DNA of 43,643 nt from Macrostomum lignano (lineage: Eukaryota), in assembly GCA_002269645.1 (NCBI GenBank), contig NIVC01000308.1:1-43643 (forward strand). Reading direction: 5' to 3'. The notes beneath the pieces were generated by a model. It had not been told where the DNA came from. It did not search any database and worked only from the letters and a program-made list of their open reading frames with translations. Both the position numbers and the translations under genes were made by a program. This document shows positions 3,381 through 34,994 of this stretch, piece by piece (position 1 is the first letter of the stretch; every line of letters begins with the position of its first letter).

Positions 3381-3845
3381 GAGTGAAGATGATGGGAAGA
3401 GAGAGTGGAGATAATGGGAAGAGAGTGGAGATGTTGAGAAGAGAGTGGAGATGATAGGAAGAGAGAGCGGAGATGATGGGAGGAGAGAGTGGAGATGATG
3501 GGAAGAGAGCGGAGATGATGGGAAGAGAGTGGAGATGATGGGAAGAGAGTGGAGATGATGGGAAGAGAGTGGAGATGATGGGAAGAGAGTGGAGATGATG
3601 GGAGGAGAGAGTGGAGATGATGGGAAGAGAGCGGAGATGATGGGAAGAGAGTGGAGATGATGGGAAGAGAGCGGAGATGATGGGAAGAGAGAGTGGAGAT
3701 GATGGGAAGAGAGTGGAGATGATGGGAAGAGAGTGGAGATGATGGGAAGAGAGTGGAGATGATGGGAAGAGAGTGGAGATGATGGGAAGAGAGTGGAGAT
3801 GATGGGAAGAGAGTGGAGATGATGGGAAGAGAGTGGAGATGATGA
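3381..3845. repeat. 20-bp purine-rich minisatellite (GAGAGTGGAGATGATGGGAA)
   Basis: Exact period 20 at 3721-3840; begins about 20 bp after the SLC6 donor. Confidence 0.95.
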
Positions 3846-6240: not shown

Positions 6241-7267
6241 AGGAGTATCGACTCTGCATTGTGTGGTACATGCATACACACGTACATATTTATAAGCATA
6301 CTTTTGAAAATTTACGACTTCTAAAATCAACAGGCACTTAATTCTGCCTTTGTCGCAGAAAATCATTAGTTAGTCAGTTGCTCTGCTATAGAAATAGAAT
6401 TTCATTGACAAGCCAACTCTACAACTGCTTGATTTTAGCTTTAGTGGAACTTCTAATTCCGCTCATCCGCACGAGATGGTTACAGCCCTCTTCGTTTTTT
6501 TAGGATTTTAAGCAAAGCTCAGCAGCTTACACATAAAAGCTCATTTTTCCCGACCACTAACTACTACTTGCTCTATAGTAGCACCTATCGTATTTCCGCA
6601 TATAGTTAGTTTTATTTGTATCCATTTTTCGATACCTGTATGCTTGCCATTATGTTAATGGTACACCGCGCTTTAACTACTATAATCGGTATAATTTTTA
6701 GTGGTAATGCGTTGCGTTTGAATTTTTGAACATAAAAATATTTGTCGTAAAGAACACTGCGAACTTTGATTTAAATTTGTTTTGTTTTAAATGTATTGCG
6801 CAGTTTACGGTACGGCGCTTATTTGCGTGAAAACAAACTTTTATTTACATGTATCTTCCACCCAGTTTATTGAAACATTTTACTGCTTTTTTTCACGTTT
6901 CTTCTATTACAGTACAAACAAACGCAATAATTGTCTTTATAAACAATATAATTTTATTGTAGCTTATAGCTTTATCTTTACAGTAAGTTAATATCTTTTA
7001 ATAAATAAGTACGGAATTTGGGATACTTGAAAACCTAAAAACTAAAATCTCAGAAGAGTTATGGAATTGTTATAATAAAAATATTAATGACATTAAATCA
7101 TTTACAGAACGGCTAAATTTAATTAAATTAAGTTTAATTAATTTAATGAAGTATATCAATCACTGATATTTTAGTAATTGAGATTTGTTAGAAACGAACG
7201 AATTTTGAAGAAAAATATTCAAAGTATCCTTACACAACCAACTTCAAACACCCACTTCAAACAATCA

Positions 7268-8620
7268 CCTACCGCTACGACCACCCCACTCCCAGCTGCA
7301 ACCACTCCACTCCCAGCTACGACCACTCCACTCCCAGCTACAACCACTCCACTCCCAGCTACAACCACCCCACTCCCAGCTACAACCACCCCACTCCCAG
7401 CTACGACCACCCCACTCCCAGCTACGACCACCCCACTCCCAGCTGCAACCACTCCACTCCCAGCTACGACCACCCCACTCCCAGCTGCAACCACTCCACT
7501 CCCAGCTACAACCACCCCACTCCCAGCTGCAACCACTCCACTCCCAGCTACAACCACCCCACTCCCAGCTACAACCACTCCACTCCCAGCTACGACCACT
7601 CCACTCCCAGCTACGACCACCCCACTCCCAGCTGCAACCACTCCACTCCCAGCTACAACCACCCCACTCCCAGCTACAACCACCCACTCCCAGCTACAAC
7701 CACTCCACTCCCAGCTACGACCACCCCACTCCCAGCTGCAACCACTCCACTCCCAGCTACAACCACCCCACTCCCAGCTACAACCACCCACTCCCAGCTA
7801 CAACCACTCCACTCCCAGCTACGACCACCCCACTCCCAGCTGCAACCACTCCACTCCCAGCTACGACCACCCCACTCCCAGCTGCAACCACTCCACTCCC
7901 AGCTACAACCACTCCACTCCCAGCTACGACCACCCCACTCCCAGCTACGACCACCCCACTCCCAGCTACGACCACCCCACTCCCAGCTGCAACCACTCCA
8001 CTCCCAGCTACGACCACCCCACTCCCAGCTACAACCACTCCACTCCCAGCTACAACCACCCCACTCCCAGCTACGACCACTCCACTCCCAGCTACGACCA
8101 CCCCACTCCCAGCTGCAACCACTCCACTCCCAGCTACGACCACCCCACTCCCAGCTGCAACCACTCCACTCCCAGCTACAACCACCCCACTCCCAGCTGC
8201 AACCACTCCACTCCCAGCTACAACCACCCCACTCCCAGCTACAACCACCCACTCCCAGCTACAACCACTCCACTCCCAGCTACGACCACCCCACTCCCAG
8301 CTGCAACCACTCCACTCCCAGCTACGACCACCCCACTCCCAGCTACAACCACCCCACTCCCAGCTACAACCACCCACTCCCAGCTACAACCACTCCACTC
8401 CCAGCTACGACCACCCCACTCCCAGCTGCAACCACTCCACTCCCAGCTACGACCACCCCACTCCCAGCTGCAACCACTCCACTCCCAGCTACAACCACTC
8501 CACTCCCAGCTACGACCACCCCACTCCCAGCTGCAACCACTCCACTCCCAGCTACAACCACCCCACTCCCAGCTACGACCACCCCACTCCCAGCTGCAAC
8601 CACACTCCCACTCCCCACAG
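7268..8620. repeat. 21-bp minisatellite (CCACTCCCAGCT(A/G)C(A/G)ACCAC(C/T)), copy 1
   Basis: About 64 units, including four 20-bp variants that switch the apparent reading frame. Confidence 0.95.
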
Positions 8621-9440
8621 TTAAAATTCCAGTGTTCTGGTGCAGCATGAATATTTATTATACTTTTAGGTTACGAGCGTAGCAAATAATAAGCAGACAA
8701 ACTTGGTATTTCCTTACAATAAACAAAACATAAAGGCGAACCATCACCCGCAAATATTAAAATATTAAAATAGTAAATAAATACATTGTTATTATACATA
8801 AACATCATCTTGGAGAGTCTTTAACGGGACGCCGTGAAATGCTCCAATTGAAAGCGCATAAAAACTCACCGTTTTAAATAAGACAAATCAGATAAATTGT
8901 TTGCAACAAAAGATTGAGAAATTTATTGCAATTTGGAAGAAAAAATTACATAAAAGTTGCTACTTTTTAATTTACTGTTCTATAAGGCAGTGCTTTGCGG
9001 GACAATGGGGACTTGGTATTTGGCTCATGTAGATTGGGGTAGGCTTGCTTTGTGGCCTATGTACTCGTACATTGACTGGGACACGGGCGGGGAGGTAGGC
9101 TCGGTTTTGGCCTATGTACATTGGGCGGGAGACGGGGTATAGCTTTATCTTTACAGTAAGTTAATATCTTTTAATAAATAAGTACGGAATTTGGGATACT
9201 TGAAAACCTAAAAACTAAAATCTCAGAAGAGTTATGGAATTGTTATAATAAAAATATTAATGACATTAAATCATTTACAGAACGGCTAAATTTAATTAAA
9301 TTAAGTTTAATTAATTTAATGAAGTATATCAATCACTGATATTTTAGTAATTGAGATTTGTTAGAAACGAACGAATTTTGAAGAAAAATATTCAAAGTAT
9401 CCTTACACAACCAACTTCAAACACCCACTTCAAACAATCA

Positions 9441-10793
9441 CCTACCGCTACGACCACCCCACTCCCAGCTGCAACCACTCCACTCCCAGCTACGACCACT
9501 CCACTCCCAGCTACAACCACTCCACTCCCAGCTACAACCACCCCACTCCCAGCTACAACCACCCCACTCCCAGCTACGACCACCCCACTCCCAGCTACGA
9601 CCACCCCACTCCCAGCTGCAACCACTCCACTCCCAGCTACGACCACCCCACTCCCAGCTGCAACCACTCCACTCCCAGCTACAACCACCCCACTCCCAGC
9701 TGCAACCACTCCACTCCCAGCTACAACCACCCCACTCCCAGCTACAACCACTCCACTCCCAGCTACGACCACTCCACTCCCAGCTACGACCACCCCACTC
9801 CCAGCTGCAACCACTCCACTCCCAGCTACAACCACCCCACTCCCAGCTACAACCACCCACTCCCAGCTACAACCACTCCACTCCCAGCTACGACCACCCC
9901 ACTCCCAGCTGCAACCACTCCACTCCCAGCTACAACCACCCCACTCCCAGCTACAACCACCCACTCCCAGCTACAACCACTCCACTCCCAGCTACGACCA
10001 CCCCACTCCCAGCTGCAACCACTCCACTCCCAGCTACGACCACCCCACTCCCAGCTGCAACCACTCCACTCCCAGCTACAACCACTCCACTCCCAGCTAC
10101 GACCACCCCACTCCCAGCTACGACCACCCCACTCCCAGCTACGACCACCCCACTCCCAGCTGCAACCACTCCACTCCCAGCTACGACCACCCCACTCCCA
10201 GCTACAACCACTCCACTCCCAGCTACAACCACCCCACTCCCAGCTACGACCACTCCACTCCCAGCTACGACCACCCCACTCCCAGCTGCAACCACTCCAC
10301 TCCCAGCTACGACCACCCCACTCCCAGCTGCAACCACTCCACTCCCAGCTACAACCACCCCACTCCCAGCTGCAACCACTCCACTCCCAGCTACAACCAC
10401 CCCACTCCCAGCTACAACCACCCACTCCCAGCTACAACCACTCCACTCCCAGCTACGACCACCCCACTCCCAGCTGCAACCACTCCACTCCCAGCTACGA
10501 CCACCCCACTCCCAGCTACAACCACCCCACTCCCAGCTACAACCACCCACTCCCAGCTACAACCACTCCACTCCCAGCTACGACCACCCCACTCCCAGCT
10601 GCAACCACTCCACTCCCAGCTACGACCACCCCACTCCCAGCTGCAACCACTCCACTCCCAGCTACAACCACTCCACTCCCAGCTACGACCACCCCACTCC
10701 CAGCTGCAACCACTCCACTCCCAGCTACAACCACCCCACTCCCAGCTACGACCACCCCACTCCCAGCTGCAACCACACTCCCACTCCCCACAG
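9441..10793. repeat. 21-bp minisatellite, copy 2
   Basis: Same variant order as copy 1. Confidence 0.95.
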
Positions 10794-11613
10794 TTAAAAT
10801 TCCAGTGTTCTGGTGCAGCATGAATATTTATTATACTTTTAGGTTACGAGCGTAGCAAATAATAAGCAGACAAACTTGGTATTTCCTTACAATAAACAAA
10901 ACATAAAGGCGAACCATCACCCGCAAATATTAAAATATTAAAATAGTAAATAAATACATTGTTATTATACATAAACATCATCTTGGAGAGTCTTTAACGG
11001 GACGCCGTGAAATGCTCCAATTGAAAGCGCATAAAAACTCACCGTTTTAAATAAGACAAATCAGATAAATTGTTTGCAACAAAAGATTGAGAAATTTATT
11101 GCAATTTGGAAGAAAAAATTACATAAAAGTTGCTACTTTTTAATTTACTGTTCTATAAGGCAGTGCTTTGCGGGACAATGGGGACTTGGTATTTGGCTCA
11201 TGTAGATTGGGGTAGGCTTGCTTTGTGGCCTATGTACTCGTACATTGACTGGGACACGGGCGGGGAGGTAGGCTCGGTTTTGGCCTATGTACATTGGGCG
11301 GGAGACGGGGTATAGCTTTATCTTTACAGTAAGTTAATATCTTTTAATAAATAAGTACGGAATTTGGGATACTTGAAAACCTAAAAACTAAAATCTCAGA
11401 AGAGTTATGGAATTGTTATAATAAAAATATTAATGACATTAAATCATTTACAGAACGGCTAAATTTAATTAAATTAAGTTTAATTAATTTAATGAAGTAT
11501 ATCAATCACTGATATTTTAGTAATTGAGATTTGTTAGAAACGAACGAATTTTGAAGAAAAATATTCAAAGTATCCTTACACAACCAACTTCAAACACCCA
11601 CTTCAAACAATCA

Positions 11614-12381
11614 CCTACCGCTACGACCACCCCACTCCCAGCTGCAACCACTCCACTCCCAGCTACAACCACTCCACTCCCAGCTACGACCACCCCACTC
11701 CCAGCTGCAACCACTCCACTCCCAGCTACAACCACCCCACTCCCAGCTACAACCACCCCACTCCCAGCTGCAACCACTCCACTCCCAGCTACAACCACCC
11801 CACTCCCAGCTACAACCACCCCACTCCCAGCTACGACCACCCCACTCCCAGCTACGACCACCCCACTCCCAGCTGCAACCACTCCACTCCCAGCTACGAC
11901 CACCCCACTCCCAGCTACAACCACTCCACTCCCAGCTACAACCACCCCACTCCCAGCTACGACCACTCCACTCCCAGCTACGACCACCCCACTCCCAGCT
12001 GCAACCACTCCACTCCCAGCTACGACCACCCCACTCCCAGCTGCAACCACTCCACTCCCAGCTACAACCACCCCACTCCCAGCTGCAACCACTCCACTCC
12101 CAGCTACAACCACCCCACTCCCAGCTACAACCACCCACTCCCAGCTACAACCACTCCACTCCCAGCTACGACCACCCCACTCCCAGCTGCAACCACTCCA
12201 CTCCCAGCTACGACCACCCCACTCCCAGCTGCAACCACTCCACTCCCAGCTACAACCACTCCACTCCCAGCTACGACCACCCCACTCCCAGCTGCAACCA
12301 CTCCACTCCCAGCTACAACCACCCCACTCCCAGCTACGACCACCCCACTCCCAGCTGCAACCACACTCCCACTCCCCACAG
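11614..12381. repeat. 21-bp minisatellite, copy 3 (shorter)
   Basis: Only one 20-bp variant unit; 585 bp shorter than copies 1 and 2. Confidence 0.95.
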
Positions 12382-12854
12382 TTAAAATTCCAGTGTTCTG
12401 GTGCAGCATGAATATTTATTATACTTTTAGGTTACGAGCGTAGCAAATAATAAGCAGACAAACTTGGTATTTCCTTACAATAAACAAAACATAAAGGCGA
12501 ACCATCACCCGCAAATATTAAAATATTAAAATAGTAAATAAATACATTGTTATTATACATAAACATCATCTTGGAGAGTCTTTAACGGGACGCCGTGAAA
12601 TGCTCCAATTGAAAGCGCATAAAAACTCACCGTTTTAAATAAGACAAATCAGATAAATTGTTTGCAACAAAAGATTGAGAAATTTATTGCAATTTGGAAG
12701 AAAAAATTACATAAAAGTTGCTACTTTTTAATTTACTGTTCTATAAGGCAGTGCTTTGCGGGACAATGGGGACTTGGTATTTGGCTCATGTAGATTGGGG
12801 TAGGCTTGCTTTGTGGCCTATGTACTCGTACATTGACTGGGACACGGGCGGGGA

Positions 12855-20547: not shown

Positions 20548-21327
20548 GATATTTAATTACCGGGGCGATTCTTTAGAGATATTCTATTACCGGGGCGATT
20601 ATTTAGGGATATTCTATTACCGGGGCGATTATTTAGGGATATTCTATTATAGGGGCGATTATTTAGGGATATTCTATTACAGGGCGATTCTTCAGGGAAA
20701 TTCTATTACAGGGCGATTCTTTAGGGAAATTCTATTACAGGGCGATTCTTTAGGGAAATTCTATTACAGGGCGATTCTTTAGGGAAATTCTATTACAGGG
20801 CGATTCTTTAGGGAAATTCTATTACAGGGCGATTCTTTAGGGAAATTCTATTACAGGGCGATTCTTTAGGGAAATTCTATTACAGGGCGATTCTTTAGGG
20901 AAATTCTATTACAGGGCGATTCTTTAGGGAAATTCTATTACAGGGCGATTCTTCAGGGAAATTCTATTACAGGGCGATTCTTTAGGGAAATTCTATTACA
21001 GGGCGATTCTTTAGGGAAATTCTATTACAGGGCGATTCTTTAGGGAAATTCTATTACAGGGCGATTCTTTAGGGAAATTCTATTACAGGGCGATTCTTTA
21101 GGGAAATTCTATTACAGGGCGATTCTTTAGGGAAATTCTATTACAGGGCGATTCTTTAGGGAAATTCTATTACAGGGCGATTCTTTAGGGAAATTCTATT
21201 ACAGGGCGATTCTTTAGGGAAATTCTATTACAGGGCGATTCTTTAGGGAAATTCTATTACAGGGCGATTCTTTAGGGATATTCTATTACAGGGCGATTCT
21301 TTAGGGATATTCTATTACAGGGCGATT
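20548..21327. repeat. 29-bp minisatellite (GGGCGATTCTTTAGGGAAATTCTATTACA) in MFSD1 intron 2
   Basis: Highly homogeneous array; resumes briefly at ~21958-22006 after the LINE insertion. Confidence 0.95.
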
Positions 21328-21347: not shown

Positions 21348-21955
21348 TTACTACGACGACGACCTAATTTACGACGACCTAGCGAGACGGCGCAGCAAGG
21401 CCTGGGCTGCCTTCCAATCTGTGCGGGCGGTGCTGCTCTCCGAGGCCCTGTCCGACGGCGCCAGGTCCCAGCTGTTCCAGGCGGTTGTTGAGACCGCCCT
21501 GCTGTACAATGCTGAGACCTGGACGCTGACCGGGGCGCTTGAGGCGCAGCTCGACGCGGCACATGCGGCCCTAGTCCGCGCCACTTTCGGCGCCCGCCGC
21601 GGCCCTGGTAGCGAGACAACCGAGTCCCTGTACAAGCGCACAGGCCTGACGCGGCCTTCTGCCCTGCTGAGACAGCGGCGCCTGCGGCTGGCCGGACATG
21701 TCATCCGGGCCGAAGCTTACTGCCCAGAGCCGCTGCAGGACGTCCTGTTGTGGACACCGCAGGGACCGCGCAGGCGTGGCCAGGGACGATCAGCCCGCTA
21801 CGTCGACCGCCTTTTTGAAGATGCGCGAGCACCCAGCCAGGCGGCCGGTGTGAAGCACATTAGAGACCTAGCTCTGAAACGCGCGATTGACGCTCCCCCC
21901 TTTTGGCCACTTCTGTGGCTGGCGTGGGGCGTAACTATTATTATTATTATTATTT
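21348..21955 (+). mobile_element. 5'-truncated non-LTR retrotransposon (RTE-like LINE), C-terminal part of the RT ORF with a (TAT)6 tail; antisense to MFSD1
   Basis: Frame DDLARRRSKAWAAF...LLYNAETWTL...RLRLAGHVIR...RRRGQGR matches the post-RT C-terminal motifs of RTE-type ORFs. (TAT)6 at 21936-21953. No clear target-site duplication. Confidence 0.85.
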
Positions 21956-22028
21956 TTGTTATTACAGGGGCGATTATTTAGGGATAATTTATTACAGGGG
22001 CGACTTCTAAAAAAACCAGAATTCTCAC

Positions 22029-23877: not shown

Positions 23878-23974
23878 CTTGGTACTCAACTTCATTGTTA
23901 TGGTCCCCAGTTGGTGCATTTAGGGCAGGAGACTGATTGCTTAAAAGAGGACTTGTTTCCTCTGCACTATCCAT
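23878..23974 (-). CDS. MFSD1: MFSD1 exon 1 (MDSAEETSPLLSNQSPALNAPTGDHNNEVEYQ-G; absent from ORF track)
   Basis: ATG at 23974; 97 nt (32 codons + 1) matches the phase-1 acceptor of exon 2; donor AAG|GTAAAT. ETSPLL fits the [DE]xxxLL lysosomal sorting signal known at the MFSD1 N-terminus. Confidence 0.85.
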
Positions 23975-24793
23975 GACAGGCTAAACTTTTGCAAAGTTAC
24001 AAGCTACTAGGGTAGGGTCTAATCTAATTAAATACTTAGCTCTGCTGGTTACTAGTATGGGCCTAAAAACTCCGTCTAGTCTAGGTCGACAACTGCCAAG
24101 AAAATGATGTTTGTGTTTATTACTAAAAACGATAAAGTTAAAAATTTGCAGTACTAACAAGAGCCATTTGATCTACTTTATTTTAACTGAAACTTGCGTG
24201 AATAAAACTTAGTTTGATAAACAATATAATACTAAAGTTGAAGTCTAACAAACGCCAAAGAAAAATCATTTTAAGTTTTGATAAACTGATTAACGGATTA
24301 GTTTAATATTAAATAGGCTGTCTTAGAATAAAAAGCACTACGTTTTGAGATCGAGATTCGCTGAATTTTTGCGCATATATTGATAATGCAGGTGCTACAG
24401 AGCAGTGCTTTATTCTGAAAACAATGCTTAAAAACCATATGCAGATTGGCTTTCTCTTCAAAACATTAAACGGTGTTTGTTCTGCGCAGTTACACTAGCT
24501 GTAATCAGCATGTTTTACTTTTTTGTGGTGGCAAATAATTGCTTCGACTTTGTGCTGAGGCCCGGCCTGAAACGCTAAATGTGCTACTCCGCCGTTGTAC
24601 ATGACCGATGCCTCTGATCATTCAGAGCTGGAAATTATACACTGATGTACATGTATATTTCTAGCGCCTGTACATTTTATTATTGCATGAATATCATATG
24701 TATGATGTATAGCTACATCCATCCTGGCCGCGGCCCCCACTAATTTTTGCGTGCCCTCCCAATTCTTCCCCTGTGATTCTTGCGCCCCTGTGA

Positions 24794-25080: not shown

Positions 25081-25145
25081 AAAATACTGTTTCGCACCAA
25101 ACCGTTTCCGACCCATATTCTCCCTGCCGCGTTTCCAGCTTACGC

Positions 25146-25212
25146 GGAGCTGCAACAATTCCGTTCGGAGCTGCAACAATTCCGTTCGGAGCTGCAACAA
25201 TTCCGTTCGGAG
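25146..25212. repeat. 3 x 21-bp direct repeat (GGAGCTGCAACAATTCCGTTC)
   Basis: Copies start at 25146, 25167 and 25188. Confidence 0.9.
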
Positions 25213-26031
25213 CCTCCTTCTCCCTTTTGGTGCGGATCGGAGCTGTAACGTCCTTGACTGCAGCCGCCGCCGTGACTATCCGACGACCACCGTGCCAACA
25301 AGAAGTCCTGACCTGCCCGTGGGCCACGTCTATAAGGTACTAATTTGTATTTCTTTCTCTGTTGCGCTGCCCTTGTTGAGTATAAGCAGCCCGCGGTCTC
25401 CCCCCTCCCGGGCCATTGCTCATCTTCTAATTTTTCATTCTTAACTTATTAAGTCCGTTTTAATAATTAACTGAATGATTTAGGTCAAGTTTAGGGCCAG
25501 TATAAAATCAGGGCATTACAACTATAGTGTATTCAAATGTTTACTATGAAATGTGAGTAGTGATCGTGCATGGCAATGGGCATGGAATAGAAGCTGAGGG
25601 TCAGAGGGAAAGATTATCGAGTATGAGCCGAATTTAACCAAATAATCATACATGTAGCATGAGTGACAGTACTTCTAAATAAGTCCCAGTAGGATGTGCC
25701 GCACGAGAGAGCCCTGGGACCTGCACTTTAATTCCCATCCCCTGCTGCATCGAACCCATCTAGGAGAAAAGCATAATTAGATGGCGTTATCTTTATATCC
25801 ACCCTTGGAATCCTGGGGCTTATTAGGAGGATATTGTAGTCTCACCAGTTTAAAGATCCCCCTATGCAAAAGCACTGAATAACTAGACTGTCTCTGTGTG
25901 CCTCGCATAGAGTTCCTCAATCGGCCACTTTGTTCTGTTGTTGAATTAACGAACGCAGAAACAAGATAGATAATTATCCGGGCGCTCAGTGGCACCAAAA
26001 GAGGGCTTGGCCAATAGGAGGGCGGCTCGTA

Positions 26032-26127
26032 TATTTATGCACGCGGGGAAGGAAAGTTCTAGAAAGACCGGGGAAGGAAACTTCTGGAACTATGCGTAAA
26101 CAAGTCCGCGGTGGAAGTTTCTAGAAA
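26032..26127 (-). promoter_or_regulatory. Cluster of three perfect heat-shock elements plus a TATA-like box
   Basis: gGAAagTTCtaGAAa 26051-26065, gGAAacTTCtgGAAc 26076-26090, gGAAgtTTCtaGAAa 26113-26127; CATAAATA on the minus strand at 26039-26032. Confidence 0.7.
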
Positions 26128-26416
26128 CGCTGTCCCCGAACTACCCCTACGCATCGCATGCCTTTGCAATACACAACACACTTCTAGTACAGTTAAGGTC
26201 AAGAACCTTCGGCTGTTACAGACCGCGCGGGAGTCCTGTCTCGTTAGTGAGACTTTTTACCGGGTGCACTCCTGCACAGGTGACTGGTGGCGGTTGCGCC
26301 TCTGGCAGCGTGTGTATTCAAACAATTGCCAGGCCCGCTGTCTAGATAATAGGGATCTTGGCCGCAAGAGAAGTTCAGCTACCGCACCAGCCAGAGACCG
26401 ACGTAATCTAGGGGTT

Positions 26417-26800
26417 ACGTCTAACAGGTGACACTATCCTCTGTCTAACAGGTGACACTATCCTCTGTCTAACAGGTGACACTATCCTCTGTCTAACAGG
26501 TGACACTATCCTCTGTCTAACAGGTGACACTATGCTCTGTCTAACAGGTGACACTATCCTCTGTCTAACAGGTGACACTATCCTCTGTCTAACAGGTGAC
26601 ACTATCCTCTGTCTAACAGGTGACACTATGCTCTGTCTAACAGGTGACATTATCCTCTGTCTAACAGGTGACACTATCCTCTGTCTAACAGGTGACACTA
26701 TCCTCTGTCTAACAGGTGACACTGTCCTCTGTCTAACAGGTGACACTATCCTCTGTCGAACAGGTGACACTATCCTCTGTCTAACAGGTGACGCTATCCT
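26417..26800. repeat. 24-bp minisatellite (TCCTCTGTCTAACAGGTGACACTA), family B inverted
   Basis: About 16 copies, period 24. Confidence 0.95.
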
Positions 26801-27859: not shown

Positions 27860-28495
27860 GATATGGAATTGAGACATTGGGGAATTGGGAATTGGGAGAA
27901 TGGGAATCGAGGGAATCGGGGTAATGGATATCGGTGCATTGGGATTCGGGGCTATTGGGATCAATGGGGGAATTGGGATTCGGGGAATCAGGGAATCGGG
28001 GTGTTGGGAATTGTGGAATTAGGAAAAAGGGAAATGAGGGAAAGGGAAATGAGGGAAAGGGAAATGAGGGAAAGGGAAATGAGGGAAAGGGAAATGAGGG
28101 AAAGGGAAATGAGGGAAAGGGAAATGAGGGAAAGGGAAATGAGGGAAAGGGAAATGAGGGAAAGGGAAATGAGGGAAAGGGAAATGAGGGAAAGGGAAAT
28201 GAGGGAAAGGGAAATGAGGGAAAGGGAAATGAGGGAAAGGGAAATGAGGGAAAGGGAAATGAGGGAAAGGGAATTAGGGAATGAGGGAAGGGAAATTTGA
28301 AAGCGAGGAATTAGGAATCGGGGTATTGGGAAACGATTGGGAATCGGGGAATTAGGAATCAGGAAATTGGGATTTAGGGACTTGGGAATCGGGGAATCGG
28401 GAAACGGGGAATTGGGGAATAGGGGAATCGGGAAACGGGGAATTGGGAATCGGGAAATTGGAAATTGAGATTCAGGGATTAGGAATCGGGACATT
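27860..28495. repeat. GGGAAT-type degenerate repeat with a 15-bp core array (GAGGGAAAGGGAAAT, ~28022-28295) in FAM221B intron 2
   Basis: Exact period 15 in the core; explains the REREM and GNEGK ORFs. Confidence 0.92.
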
Positions 28496-34432: not shown

Positions 34433-34994
34433 CTGTCCCAGTTTATCATCCTGGCAAAGTTATTTACAATCCTAAATATTGTCATGCACAAATTTTATGG
34501 GGAAATTTTTAACTGCCTTTGTAAATTAAATGTGTTCAGCGCTTTTGGGATTTGAAGTGCGTCGCAATCTCCCAGTTTCTCTCCTTCATCTGTCGCCGCT
34601 CCTTTGAGCAGTGCTCACTGATGAGGAACAAAACCTCAACGAGACGATCATCCCTAACCCCCCTTTTTCAGCCGTAGCTTCGGAAGCTGGTGCCAAACAA
34701 GTAAAAAAATCAGCATCATTTCTAACCCTCCCAGTTTATGATCAACAATCAGTTCTCTGATTTTAATAAATGTTTTATAATAATAAAAACAATGCGATTT
34801 TAAATAATCACGCACTTATACTACTACTGTCACTATTATCACCATCAATTTTCCGGTGAAAATTCGGCATCTGTAACGATTATTATATTCTCACATCCAC
34901 ATGGTATTTGAACTGCAAAATTTATGAACGCTTCAGGAAAATTCAGTTTTTAAAGAACACACTGTACTTCAATTAGAGGGGGCCAAATACCTAT

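What the first reader, a model, noticed from the sequence alone, without database searches (positions are those of the whole stretch)
25846..26127. Orphan heat-shock promoter: three perfect HSEs and a TATA box aimed at a lysosomal transporter rather than an hsp gene
Seen: three perfect nGAAnnTTCnnGAAn elements within 77 bp (two may derive from a 25-bp local duplication). CATAAATA lies on the minus strand 12 bp from the nearest HSE. Downstream on that strand are an ATG at 25908 and a donor CTG|GTGAGA at 25845. Known: HSE-then-TATA at this spacing is the classic HSF1-driven hsp70-type layout. No chaperone ORF lies downstream. Inference: this is a heat-inducible first exon (~26005-25846). If it splices to the acceptor TTTAG|CCTGTC just before the MFSD1 ATG (exon start 23980), it stays in frame and adds MRGTQRQSSYSVLLHRGIFKLPV ahead of the dileucine signal. 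That would couple HSF to lysosomal peptide export, and possibly to SLC37A3 further downstream. In-frame joining has a 1-in-3 chance probability. A heat-induced lncRNA is the alternative.
Basis: partly seen in the sequence, partly recalled or inferred. Interest (0 to 1): 0.75.

Follow-up and report, generated by a model that had tools for sequence, protein, structure and literature searches.

The report
Heat-responsive solo LTR upstream of MFSD1
The three heat-shock elements and TATA box are real, but they belong to a 248-bp solo LTR left by a flatworm (Macrostomum lignano) retrotransposon family already published as heat-inducible, so this is a known transposon promoter near MFSD1, not a host heat-shock switch built for that gene.

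Summary
Three perfect HSEs lie at 26052-26126, with CATAAATA 12 bp away on the minus strand.

The window is scaffold NIVC01000308.1 of the Macrostomum lignano assembly Mlig_3_7. Minus-strand 26178->25931 (248 bp, TGTTG...GAACA) matches the published LTR promoter of the Ty3/Mdg4 Mag-clade family Mlig-id115 (ID206 in the preprint). It is flanked by a 5-bp target-site duplication, AAGTG.

A second assembly copy of the locus carries a full-length 4,529-bp element at the same site with the same duplication. Its LTRs are near-identical and it has one 1,327-aa PR-RT-RNaseH-IN reading frame. The window copy and a third copy are solo LTRs.

Ustyantsev et al. 2025 showed this family is induced by heat (log2FC about 8). 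They also showed that the isolated LTR drives a reporter only when its HSEs are intact.

So the promoter reading holds, but "orphan host promoter aimed at MFSD1" does not. MFSD1, SLC37A3 and FAM221 are absent from the preprint's list of heat-upregulated genes.

Read-out transcription toward MFSD1 remains possible but is unshown. This is an already known kind of element and of low interest.

The parts
25931..26178 (-). Solo LTR (248 bp, 5'-TGTTGTG...AACAGAACA-3') of the Ty3/Mdg4 Mag-clade retrotransposon family Mlig-id115 (= Mlig_LTR-RT_ID206)
   Evidence: It is 96.8% identical to each of two machine-read prints of the published KU60 LTR promoter; the two prints disagree with each other where they differ from the window. 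It is 100% identical to the 3' LTR of the full-length element in L007 and to the solo LTR in L006.
26179..26183 (-). Upstream copy of the 5-bp target-site duplication AAGTG
   Evidence: the left flank ...ctagAAGTG|TGTTGTG is identical in L005 (the window), L006 and L007.
25926..25930 (-). Downstream copy of the 5-bp target-site duplication AAGTG
   Evidence: the right flank ACA|AAGTGgccgattgagg follows the solo LTR here and in L006, and follows the 3' LTR of the full-length element in L007.
26114..26126 (-). HSE 3 (distal), TTCTAGAAACTTC, in U3 of the LTR
   Evidence: It fits the published HSE pattern nTTCnaGAAnnTTCc that was mutated in the reporter experiment.
26077..26089 (-). HSE 2, TTCCAGAAGTTTC
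26052..26064 (-). HSE 1 (proximal), TTCTAGAACTTTC
26030..26039 (-). TATA-like box CATAAATATA of the LTR. It implies a transcription start near 26010-26000 (inferred).
   Evidence: The preprint's Fig. S3 marks a putative TATA box in this LTR.
25846..25930 (-). Host flank immediately downstream of the LTR. It is a possible read-out or chimeric exon with no transcript evidence.
   Evidence: The 73-aa ORF 25998-25777 has no Pfam family and is not on record as a called gene.
23878..23980 (-). MFSD1 (BOX15_Mlig018958g3) first coding exon. The ATG is at 23974 and the dileucine motif is EETSPLL. An AG at 23982-23981 precedes it and could be a cis- or SL trans-splice acceptor.

Best explanation
The HSE cluster is the U3 promoter of a solo LTR. 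A Ty3/Mdg4 (Mag-clade) retrotransposon of family Mlig-id115 inserted between FAM221 and MFSD1, in the same orientation as both genes, and duplicated the target AAGTG. In one assembly copy of the locus the element is still full-length. In the window and in a third copy, recombination between the two LTRs removed the interior and left a single 248-bp LTR.

The family carries three canonical HSEs and a TATA box so that the host heat-shock factor drives its own transcription. The solo LTR keeps this module intact. On heat shock it most likely fires and produces short-lived read-out RNA running from about 26005 into host DNA toward MFSD1. This has no demonstrated consequence for MFSD1 protein or expression.

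Shown here: the LTR identity, its boundaries, the target-site duplication, the full-length sister copy and the solo status. Shown by others for the family: heat induction and dependence on the HSEs. Inferred: activity of this particular copy, the start-site position and the fate of read-out RNA.
For: -: the window is M. lignano scaffold NIVC01000308.1 of GCA_002269645.1, the assembly used in the paper.
- 26178->25931 aligns over its full 248 bp at 96.8% to both machine-read prints of the published KU60 LTR promoter.
- the published HSE pattern nTTCnaGAAnnTTCc fits all three HSEs.
- L007 carries two LTRs (3495-3743 and 7776-8023, differing by one 1-bp indel) flanking a single 1,327-aa ORF. The insertion site and AAGTG duplication are the same. 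A TGG-starting primer-binding-like sequence lies 1 nt after the 5' LTR, and a polypurine tract GGAAGGAGGGGAAGAA lies before the 3' LTR.
- that ORF has protease (weak), RVT_1, RT_RNaseH, Integrase_H2C2 and rve in Ty3 order.
- flanks are 99-100% identical among the three copies.
- there is no second LTR and no gag-pol ORF in the window.
- the family is upregulated with log2FC 8.1, the isolated LTR drives mScarlet after 37 C, and HSE mutation abolishes this.
Against: - No transcript data for this specific copy were available. It could be silenced by chromatin or small RNAs.
- The published LTR sequence was available only as machine-read PDF text, so 8 apparent differences cannot be resolved base by base.
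- The Mag-clade assignment rests on the paper's phylogeny and was not redone here.
- The paper mentions two solo LTRs within 2 kb of mildly upregulated host genes without naming them. This LTR is 1,957 bp from the MFSD1 ATG, so a mild effect on MFSD1 cannot be excluded.
Confidence: 0.93

Rival explanations
1. LTR co-option without protein change. Heat-induced transcripts start in the solo LTR (or the 3' LTR of the full-length allele) and read through to the AG at 23981. There they are SL trans-spliced, or cis-spliced from the 25845 donor. The result is ordinary MFSD1 mRNA and a mild heat responsiveness for MFSD1, and possibly for SLC37A3 downstream.
For: - The LTR has the same orientation as MFSD1 and lies 1,957 bp upstream of its ATG.
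- An AG lies 6 nt before the ATG.
- The SL ends in ATG, and joining it at 23980 is in frame, giving MPVMDSAEE....
- The paper reports two unnamed solo LTRs within 2 kb of mildly upregulated genes.
Against: - MFSD1, SLC37 and FAM221 do not occur in the complete upregulated sheet (log2FC>1) of the preprint's 3'-end RNA-seq, which would count any MFSD1 mRNA whatever its 5' end.
- Four AATAAA and three ATTAAA hexamers lie between the LTR and the exon.
- The acceptor GTTTAG fits the published trans-splice motif YTNCAG poorly.
- Whether MFSD1 is trans-spliced is unknown.
Confidence: 0.1
2. A heat-inducible alternative first exon (about 26005-25846) splices to 23980 and adds MRGTQRQSSYSVLLHRGIFKLPV to the MFSD1 N-terminus ahead of the dileucine signal.
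For: - The donor CTG|GTGAGA matches the species' GT[G/A]AG donor motif.
- The junction is in frame.
- The promoter family is proven heat-inducible.
Against: - The extension is encoded by arbitrary host flank 23 nt past a recent TE insertion, and no family matches it.
- GT[GA]AG occurs 3 times in the 1.96-kb spacer, so one near the LTR is unremarkable.
- The frame match is a 1-in-3 event.
- MFSD1 is not in the heat-upregulated list.
- No protein with this N-terminus was recovered, although that search was uninformative.
- The paralogous MFSD1 genes lack any such element.
Confidence: 0.03
3. A relic host hsp-gene promoter, left after loss or translocation of a chaperone gene, or a host promoter that the retrotransposon family copied from this locus.
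For: The HSE-TATA spacing resembles hsp70-type promoters. No chaperone ORF lies downstream.
Against: - The whole module lies inside TG...CA termini bounded by a target-site duplication.
- It occurs twice as terminal repeats of an intact gag-pol element at the same site in L007.
- The paper reports 19 copies of the family.
- Host flanks outside the LTR carry no HSE.
Confidence: 0.01

Closest known systems
Mlig-id115|Mag (Mlig_LTR-RT_ID206) LTR retrotransposon of Macrostomum lignano (Ustyantsev et al., Mob DNA 2025, PMC12801592)
   Same: It is the same sequence, with three HSEs of the form nTTCnaGAAnnTTCc, the same TATA and the same LTR termini. It comes from the same genome assembly.
   Different: This copy is a solo LTR rather than a full element. 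Its position 1.96 kb upstream of MFSD1, and the full-length/solo pair at one site, are not individually described in the text I could read.
ONSEN (ATCOPIA78) of Arabidopsis
   Same: It is an LTR retrotransposon whose LTR carries HSEs bound by heat-shock factor, which gives strong heat induction. Its solo or new copies can make neighbouring genes heat-responsive. This comparison draws on established knowledge and on the paper.
   Different: ONSEN is a Ty1/Copia element of plants. The HSEs were acquired independently. No effect on neighbouring genes is shown here.
Helitron1_CE of Caenorhabditis elegans
   Same: It is a transposon that carries HSEs and spreads HSF-1-responsive elements around a genome (cited).
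   Different: It is a rolling-circle DNA transposon, not an LTR element, and it has no LTR promoter or TATA architecture.
Drosophila/vertebrate hsp70 promoter
   Same: It has multiple nGAAn trimers immediately upstream of a TATA box.
   Different: It drives a chaperone gene and is of host origin. Here there is no chaperone downstream and the module is TE-borne.

Membership tests
Solo LTR of an LTR retrotransposon (family Mlig-id115|Mag) | Sequence identity to the family's LTR over its full length | tested here: met
   248 of 248 bp are identical to the L007 3' LTR and to the L006 solo LTR. Identity is 96.8% to each of two machine-read prints of the published LTR.
Solo LTR of an LTR retrotransposon (family Mlig-id115|Mag) | TG...CA termini | tested here: met
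   The termini are TGTTGTG...AACAGAACA.
Solo LTR of an LTR retrotransposon (family Mlig-id115|Mag) | Short target-site duplication directly flanking the single LTR | tested here: met
   AAGTG lies on both sides. The same 5-mer flanks the complete element in L007.
Solo LTR of an LTR retrotransposon (family Mlig-id115|Mag) | No internal gag-pol region and no second LTR at the locus | tested here: met
   The self-BLAST finds no second copy. There is no long ORF between 25930 and 23980. Host flank resumes immediately after the LTR.
Ty3/Mdg4 LTR retrotransposon (the full-length sister copy, L007 3495-8023) | Two near-identical LTRs, a PBS-like TGG sequence after the 5' LTR, a polypurine tract before the 3' LTR, and pol domains in the order PR-RT-RH-IN | tested here: met
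   The LTRs differ by one indel. TTGGCGACGAGGATGG follows the 5' LTR and GGAAGGAGGGGAAGAA precedes the 3' LTR. Pfam finds Asp_protease_2 (weak), RVT_1, RT_RNaseH, Integrase_H2C2 and rve in that order. The tRNA complementary to the PBS was not identified, since no tRNA gene is in the loci held.
Ty3/Mdg4 LTR retrotransposon (the full-length sister copy, L007 3495-8023) | Placement in the Mag clade by RT phylogeny | not tested
   Taken from PMC12801592.
Heat-inducible HSE-dependent promoter | Canonical trimeric HSEs upstream of a TATA box | tested here: met
Heat-inducible HSE-dependent promoter | Heat-induced transcription that needs the HSEs | not testable with these tools
   This was shown for the cloned family LTR (KU60 reporter and RNA-seq log2FC 8.1). 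It was not shown for this genomic copy.
Host hsp-gene promoter | A chaperone coding sequence downstream | tested here: not met
   There is no chaperone ORF. The 73-aa ORF has no Pfam family.
Host hsp-gene promoter | Host (non-TE) origin and conservation at related loci | tested here: not met
   The module lies entirely within the LTR. The paralogous MFSD1 loci L008 and L009 have no HSE cluster upstream.
Alternative first exon of MFSD1 | A usable donor and acceptor, and an open frame across the junction | tested here: met
   This is weak evidence: the frame match is a 1-in-3 event, the acceptor is TAG, and there are 3 GT[GA]AG in the spacer.
Alternative first exon of MFSD1 | Transcript or protein evidence for the junction | tested here: inconclusive
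   The protein search with the extended N-terminus returned one unrelated hit and did not even recover the known MFSD1. No RNA data were accessible.
Alternative first exon of MFSD1 | Heat induction of MFSD1 mRNA | tested here: not met
   MFSD1 is absent from the fully held upregulated sheet (log2FC>1, FDR<0.05) of preprint Table S2. The caveats are that counts are at transcript-cluster level and the table is the preprint version.

The most novel reading that the evidence does not exclude
The polymorphic insertion (full-length element in one copy of the locus, solo LTR in two) acts as a heat-responsive upstream promoter. Through cis- or SL trans-splicing at the AG before the MFSD1 ATG, it would give one or more MFSD1 copies, and perhaps SLC37A3, a mild HSF-dependent induction. 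That would be a very young example of a flatworm LTR wiring a lysosomal transporter into the heat-shock response.
Probability: 0.1. Interest if true: 0.4.

Novelty: already known. Interest (0 to 1): 0.15.

Why it matters
The result turns an apparently surprising regulatory link, HSF driving a lysosomal dipeptide transporter, into an ordinary case. It is a young solo LTR of a transposon family already shown to have captured heat-shock elements for its own expression.

The residual value is modest:
- The locus offers a natural full-length/solo pair at one site with identical flanks.
- It sits 2 kb upstream of, and co-oriented with, a conserved gene.
- It is therefore a convenient place to test whether HSE-bearing LTRs spread heat responsiveness to host genes in an animal, as ONSEN does in plants.

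Tried and rejected
- Orthologue conservation. The first homolog hits (P0003, P0009) came from unrelated compact eukaryotic genomes and were useless for synteny.
- Host hsp promoter relic. Rejected because of the LTR termini, the target-site duplication and the full-length sister element.
- 5' LTR of a truncated element. Rejected because the sequence after the LTR is the duplicated target plus host flank, identical to what follows the 3' LTR in L007. It is not the PBS that follows the L007 5' LTR.
- Plus-strand promoter (CCAAT-GC box-TATATTTA reading rightward). Rejected because the LTR and the element's ORF are oriented on the minus strand of the window.
- Protein search for the predicted N-terminally extended MFSD1. 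It returned one irrelevant hit and missed the known protein, so it is uninformative.
- Exact look-up of the 73-aa ORF spanning the LTR/flank junction. It is not on record.
- Literature search for the gene id Mlig018958. No papers.
- tRNA scan to identify the PBS partner. There are no tRNA genes in the loci held. From memory, the PBS-like sequence resembles the complement of a tRNA-Ser 3' end; this is untested.
- Supplementary files of the final paper are not held, so the preprint's were used instead.
- Pfam on the 186-aa intronic ORF 21421-21981 gave nothing.

Full report
**1. The observation**

The minus strand of 26126-26052 carries three perfect trimeric heat-shock elements: TTCTAGAAACTTC, TTCCAGAAGTTTC and TTCTAGAACTTTC. 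The pattern occurs four times in the 43.6-kb window against 0.56 expected, and no shuffle of 100 reached four. Three of the four fall within 75 bp. The two proximal elements sit in a 21-nt direct repeat spaced 25 bp apart.

CATAAATA lies at 26039-26032, 12 nt downstream of the nearest element. The proposed splice is in frame.

**2. Where the window comes from**

A concatenate of the MFS-transporter exons found BOX15_Mlig018958g3 of the flatworm Macrostomum lignano. Its only contig is 43,643 bp, the length of the window. The look-up placed it on NIVC01000308.1 of GCA_002269645.1, assembly Mlig_3_7.

On the minus strand the gene order is:
- a FAM221 homologue (CDS 29839-27497);
- the finding;
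- MFSD1 (CDS 23974-17562);
- an SLC37A3-like MFS gene (16338-13965).

**3. What the HSE cluster is**

A literature search for heat-shock promoters in this species returned Ustyantsev et al. 2025 (Mob DNA 17:3, PMC12801592). They report that several LTR retrotransposon families of M. lignano have acquired canonical HSEs in their LTRs. The top family is Mlig-id115|Mag, with 19 copies and three HSEs per LTR. It is called ID206 in the preprint.

The preprint's Fig. S3 prints the LTR promoter cloned into reporter plasmid KU60. Window minus strand 26178->25931 aligns end to end with both machine-read prints of that sequence at 96.8%. The two prints differ from each other at the places where they differ from the window, so much of the residual mismatch is probably reading noise. 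The published description of the HSEs, nTTCnaGAAnnTTCc, fits all three elements.

The segment begins TGTTGTG and ends GAACA. It is bracketed by the same pentamer, AAGTG, on both sides.

**4. Sister copies of the locus settle the history**

The protein cluster of Mlig018958 has three members, g1, g2 and g3. Their loci were fetched.

| Copy | Scaffold | Locus | State of the insertion |
|---|---|---|---|
| g3 | NIVC01000308.1 | window (L005 reversed) | solo LTR |
| g1 | NIVC01001679.1 | L006 | solo LTR, 100% identical, same flanks |
| g2 | NIVC01000307.1 | L007 | full-length element |

In g2 the LTR occurs twice, at 3495-3743 and 7776-8023, and the two copies differ by a single 1-bp indel. Between them lies one uninterrupted 1,327-aa reading frame. 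It has aspartyl protease (weak), reverse transcriptase, RNase H, integrase zinc-finger and integrase core domains in the Ty3 order.

The sequence left of the 5' LTR and right of the 3' LTR is the same host sequence that flanks the solo LTRs, including AAGTG on each side. A TGG-starting primer-binding-like sequence follows the 5' LTR, and a polypurine run precedes the 3' LTR. Host flanks are 99-100% identical among the three copies.

So a 4,529-bp element inserted once at this AAGTG. In two of the three assembly copies, LTR-LTR recombination then reduced it to a solo LTR. The near-identity of the LTRs says the insertion is young. Whether the three copies are alleles, homeologues of this hidden polyploid, or assembly redundancy cannot be decided here.

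**5. How it most likely works**

For the family, the paper reports the following:
- heat induction with log2FC 8.1 in the preprint table after 2 h at 37 C;
- induction within 5-15 min by qPCR;
- heat-dependent reporter expression from the isolated LTR, in injected eggs and in a stable line;
- complete loss of that response when the HSEs are mutated.

Binding by heat-shock factor itself was not shown by the authors.

The solo LTR in the window keeps all three HSEs and the TATA box unchanged. The best inference is that it fires on heat shock from about 26010-26000. The RNA would run out of the LTR at 25931 into host DNA toward MFSD1.

That 1,959-nt stretch contains four AATAAA and three ATTAAA hexamers, and 35 ATGs ahead of the MFSD1 start. 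Unprocessed read-through would therefore be a poor MFSD1 message. Only cis-splicing from the 25845 donor, or spliced-leader trans-splicing at 23980, could yield a functional mRNA.

About 30% of M. lignano genes are trans-spliced. The SL ends in ATG (PMC8629364), and joining it at 23980 would also be in frame. However, the acceptor GTTTAG is a poor match to the published YTNCAG motif, and I have no evidence that MFSD1 is trans-spliced.

**6. Test of the MFSD1 coupling**

The RNA-seq in the paper counts 3' ends (Smart-3SEQ). It would therefore register any MFSD1 mRNA whatever its first exon.

The preprint's sheet of upregulated genes (log2FC>1, FDR<0.05) is held in full, because the second sheet begins at part 31 of 40. 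It contains no MFSD1, SLC37, FAM221 or ANKEF1. There are three caveats:
- counts are per transcript cluster, so three or more gene copies are pooled;
- this is the preprint's analysis, not the final one;
- the final text mentions two unnamed solo LTRs within 2 kb of mildly induced genes, and this LTR is 1,957 bp from the MFSD1 ATG.

The paralogous MFSD1 genes (Mlig023589; L008, L009) have no HSE cluster in the 10 kb upstream. There is thus no sign of an older HSF-MFSD1 link. The 73-aa ORF across the LTR/flank junction has no family and no record as a called gene. A protein search with the predicted extended N-terminus was uninformative.

**7. Comparison and verdict**

This is a member of an already described family in the very genome assembly where that family was described. 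It works like ONSEN in Arabidopsis, and like the HSE-bearing Helitron1_CE in C. elegans. It resembles an hsp70 promoter because the transposon has convergently built one.

It fails the tests for a host hsp promoter: no chaperone lies downstream, its origin is a TE, and there is no conservation. The tests for a bona fide MFSD1 exon are either trivial or not met.

That result was obtained.

Novelty is "already known" and interest is low. The only open and mildly interesting question is whether this young insertion lends MFSD1 some heat responsiveness.

Noticed in passing
L007 3495-8023 (NIVC01000307.1, upstream of Mlig018958g2): This is an apparently intact full-length copy of the heat-inducible Mlig-id115|Mag element. 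It is 4,529 bp long, its LTRs differ by one 1-bp indel, and it has a single 1,327-aa open reading frame. It sits at the same AAGTG site where the window and L006 have solo LTRs, giving a natural full-length/solo pair.
   Followed up: yes
window 23980-23972 (minus): The published M. lignano spliced leader ends in ATG. Joined at the AG before the MFSD1 start, it would read in frame (MPVMDSAEE...). Whether MFSD1 is trans-spliced is unknown, and the acceptor is TAG rather than the preferred CAG.
   Followed up: partly
L008 20743-23851 and L009 20952-24066: The paralogous MFSD1 gene (Mlig023589) has an HSP70-family gene 3.6-5.5 kb downstream on the same strand. A single HSE (GAATCTTCAGGAA) lies about 1.9-3 kb upstream of that HSP70 gene. 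No HSE cluster lies upstream of the MFSD1 paralogue.
   Followed up: partly
window 7178-12411: The window holds long tandem copies with a period of 2,173 bp. The ORFs 7178-8650 and 9351-10823 are identical, and 11524-12411 is shorter. Each copy is built from threonine/proline-like minisatellites with strong GC skew (-0.5 to -0.7).
   Followed up: no
window 26419-26800, 20563-21327, 28026-28281, 25145-25213: Dense minisatellites (24-, 29-, 30- and 21-bp units) lie in the intergenic and intronic DNA around the LTR. The 24-bp x 16 array lies 240 bp upstream of the LTR in host flank.
   Followed up: no
window 34932-34944: This is the only other perfect HSE trimer in the window (TTCAGGAAAATTC). It is isolated and sits at the edge of a low-complexity repeat, so it is probably a chance match.
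   Followed up: no
window 21421-21981 (+): A GC-rich 186-aa ORF lies inside an MFSD1 intron on the opposite strand. From memory it looks like the C-terminal tail of a non-LTR retrotransposon reverse transcriptase, but Pfam found nothing.
   Followed up: partly
window 17562-16338: The MFSD1 stop and the SLC37A3-like start are only about 1.2 kb apart on the same strand, and part of that is minisatellite. By the published repeat-adjusted 1-kb criterion the pair might qualify as an operon if the downstream gene is trans-spliced.
   Followed up: no
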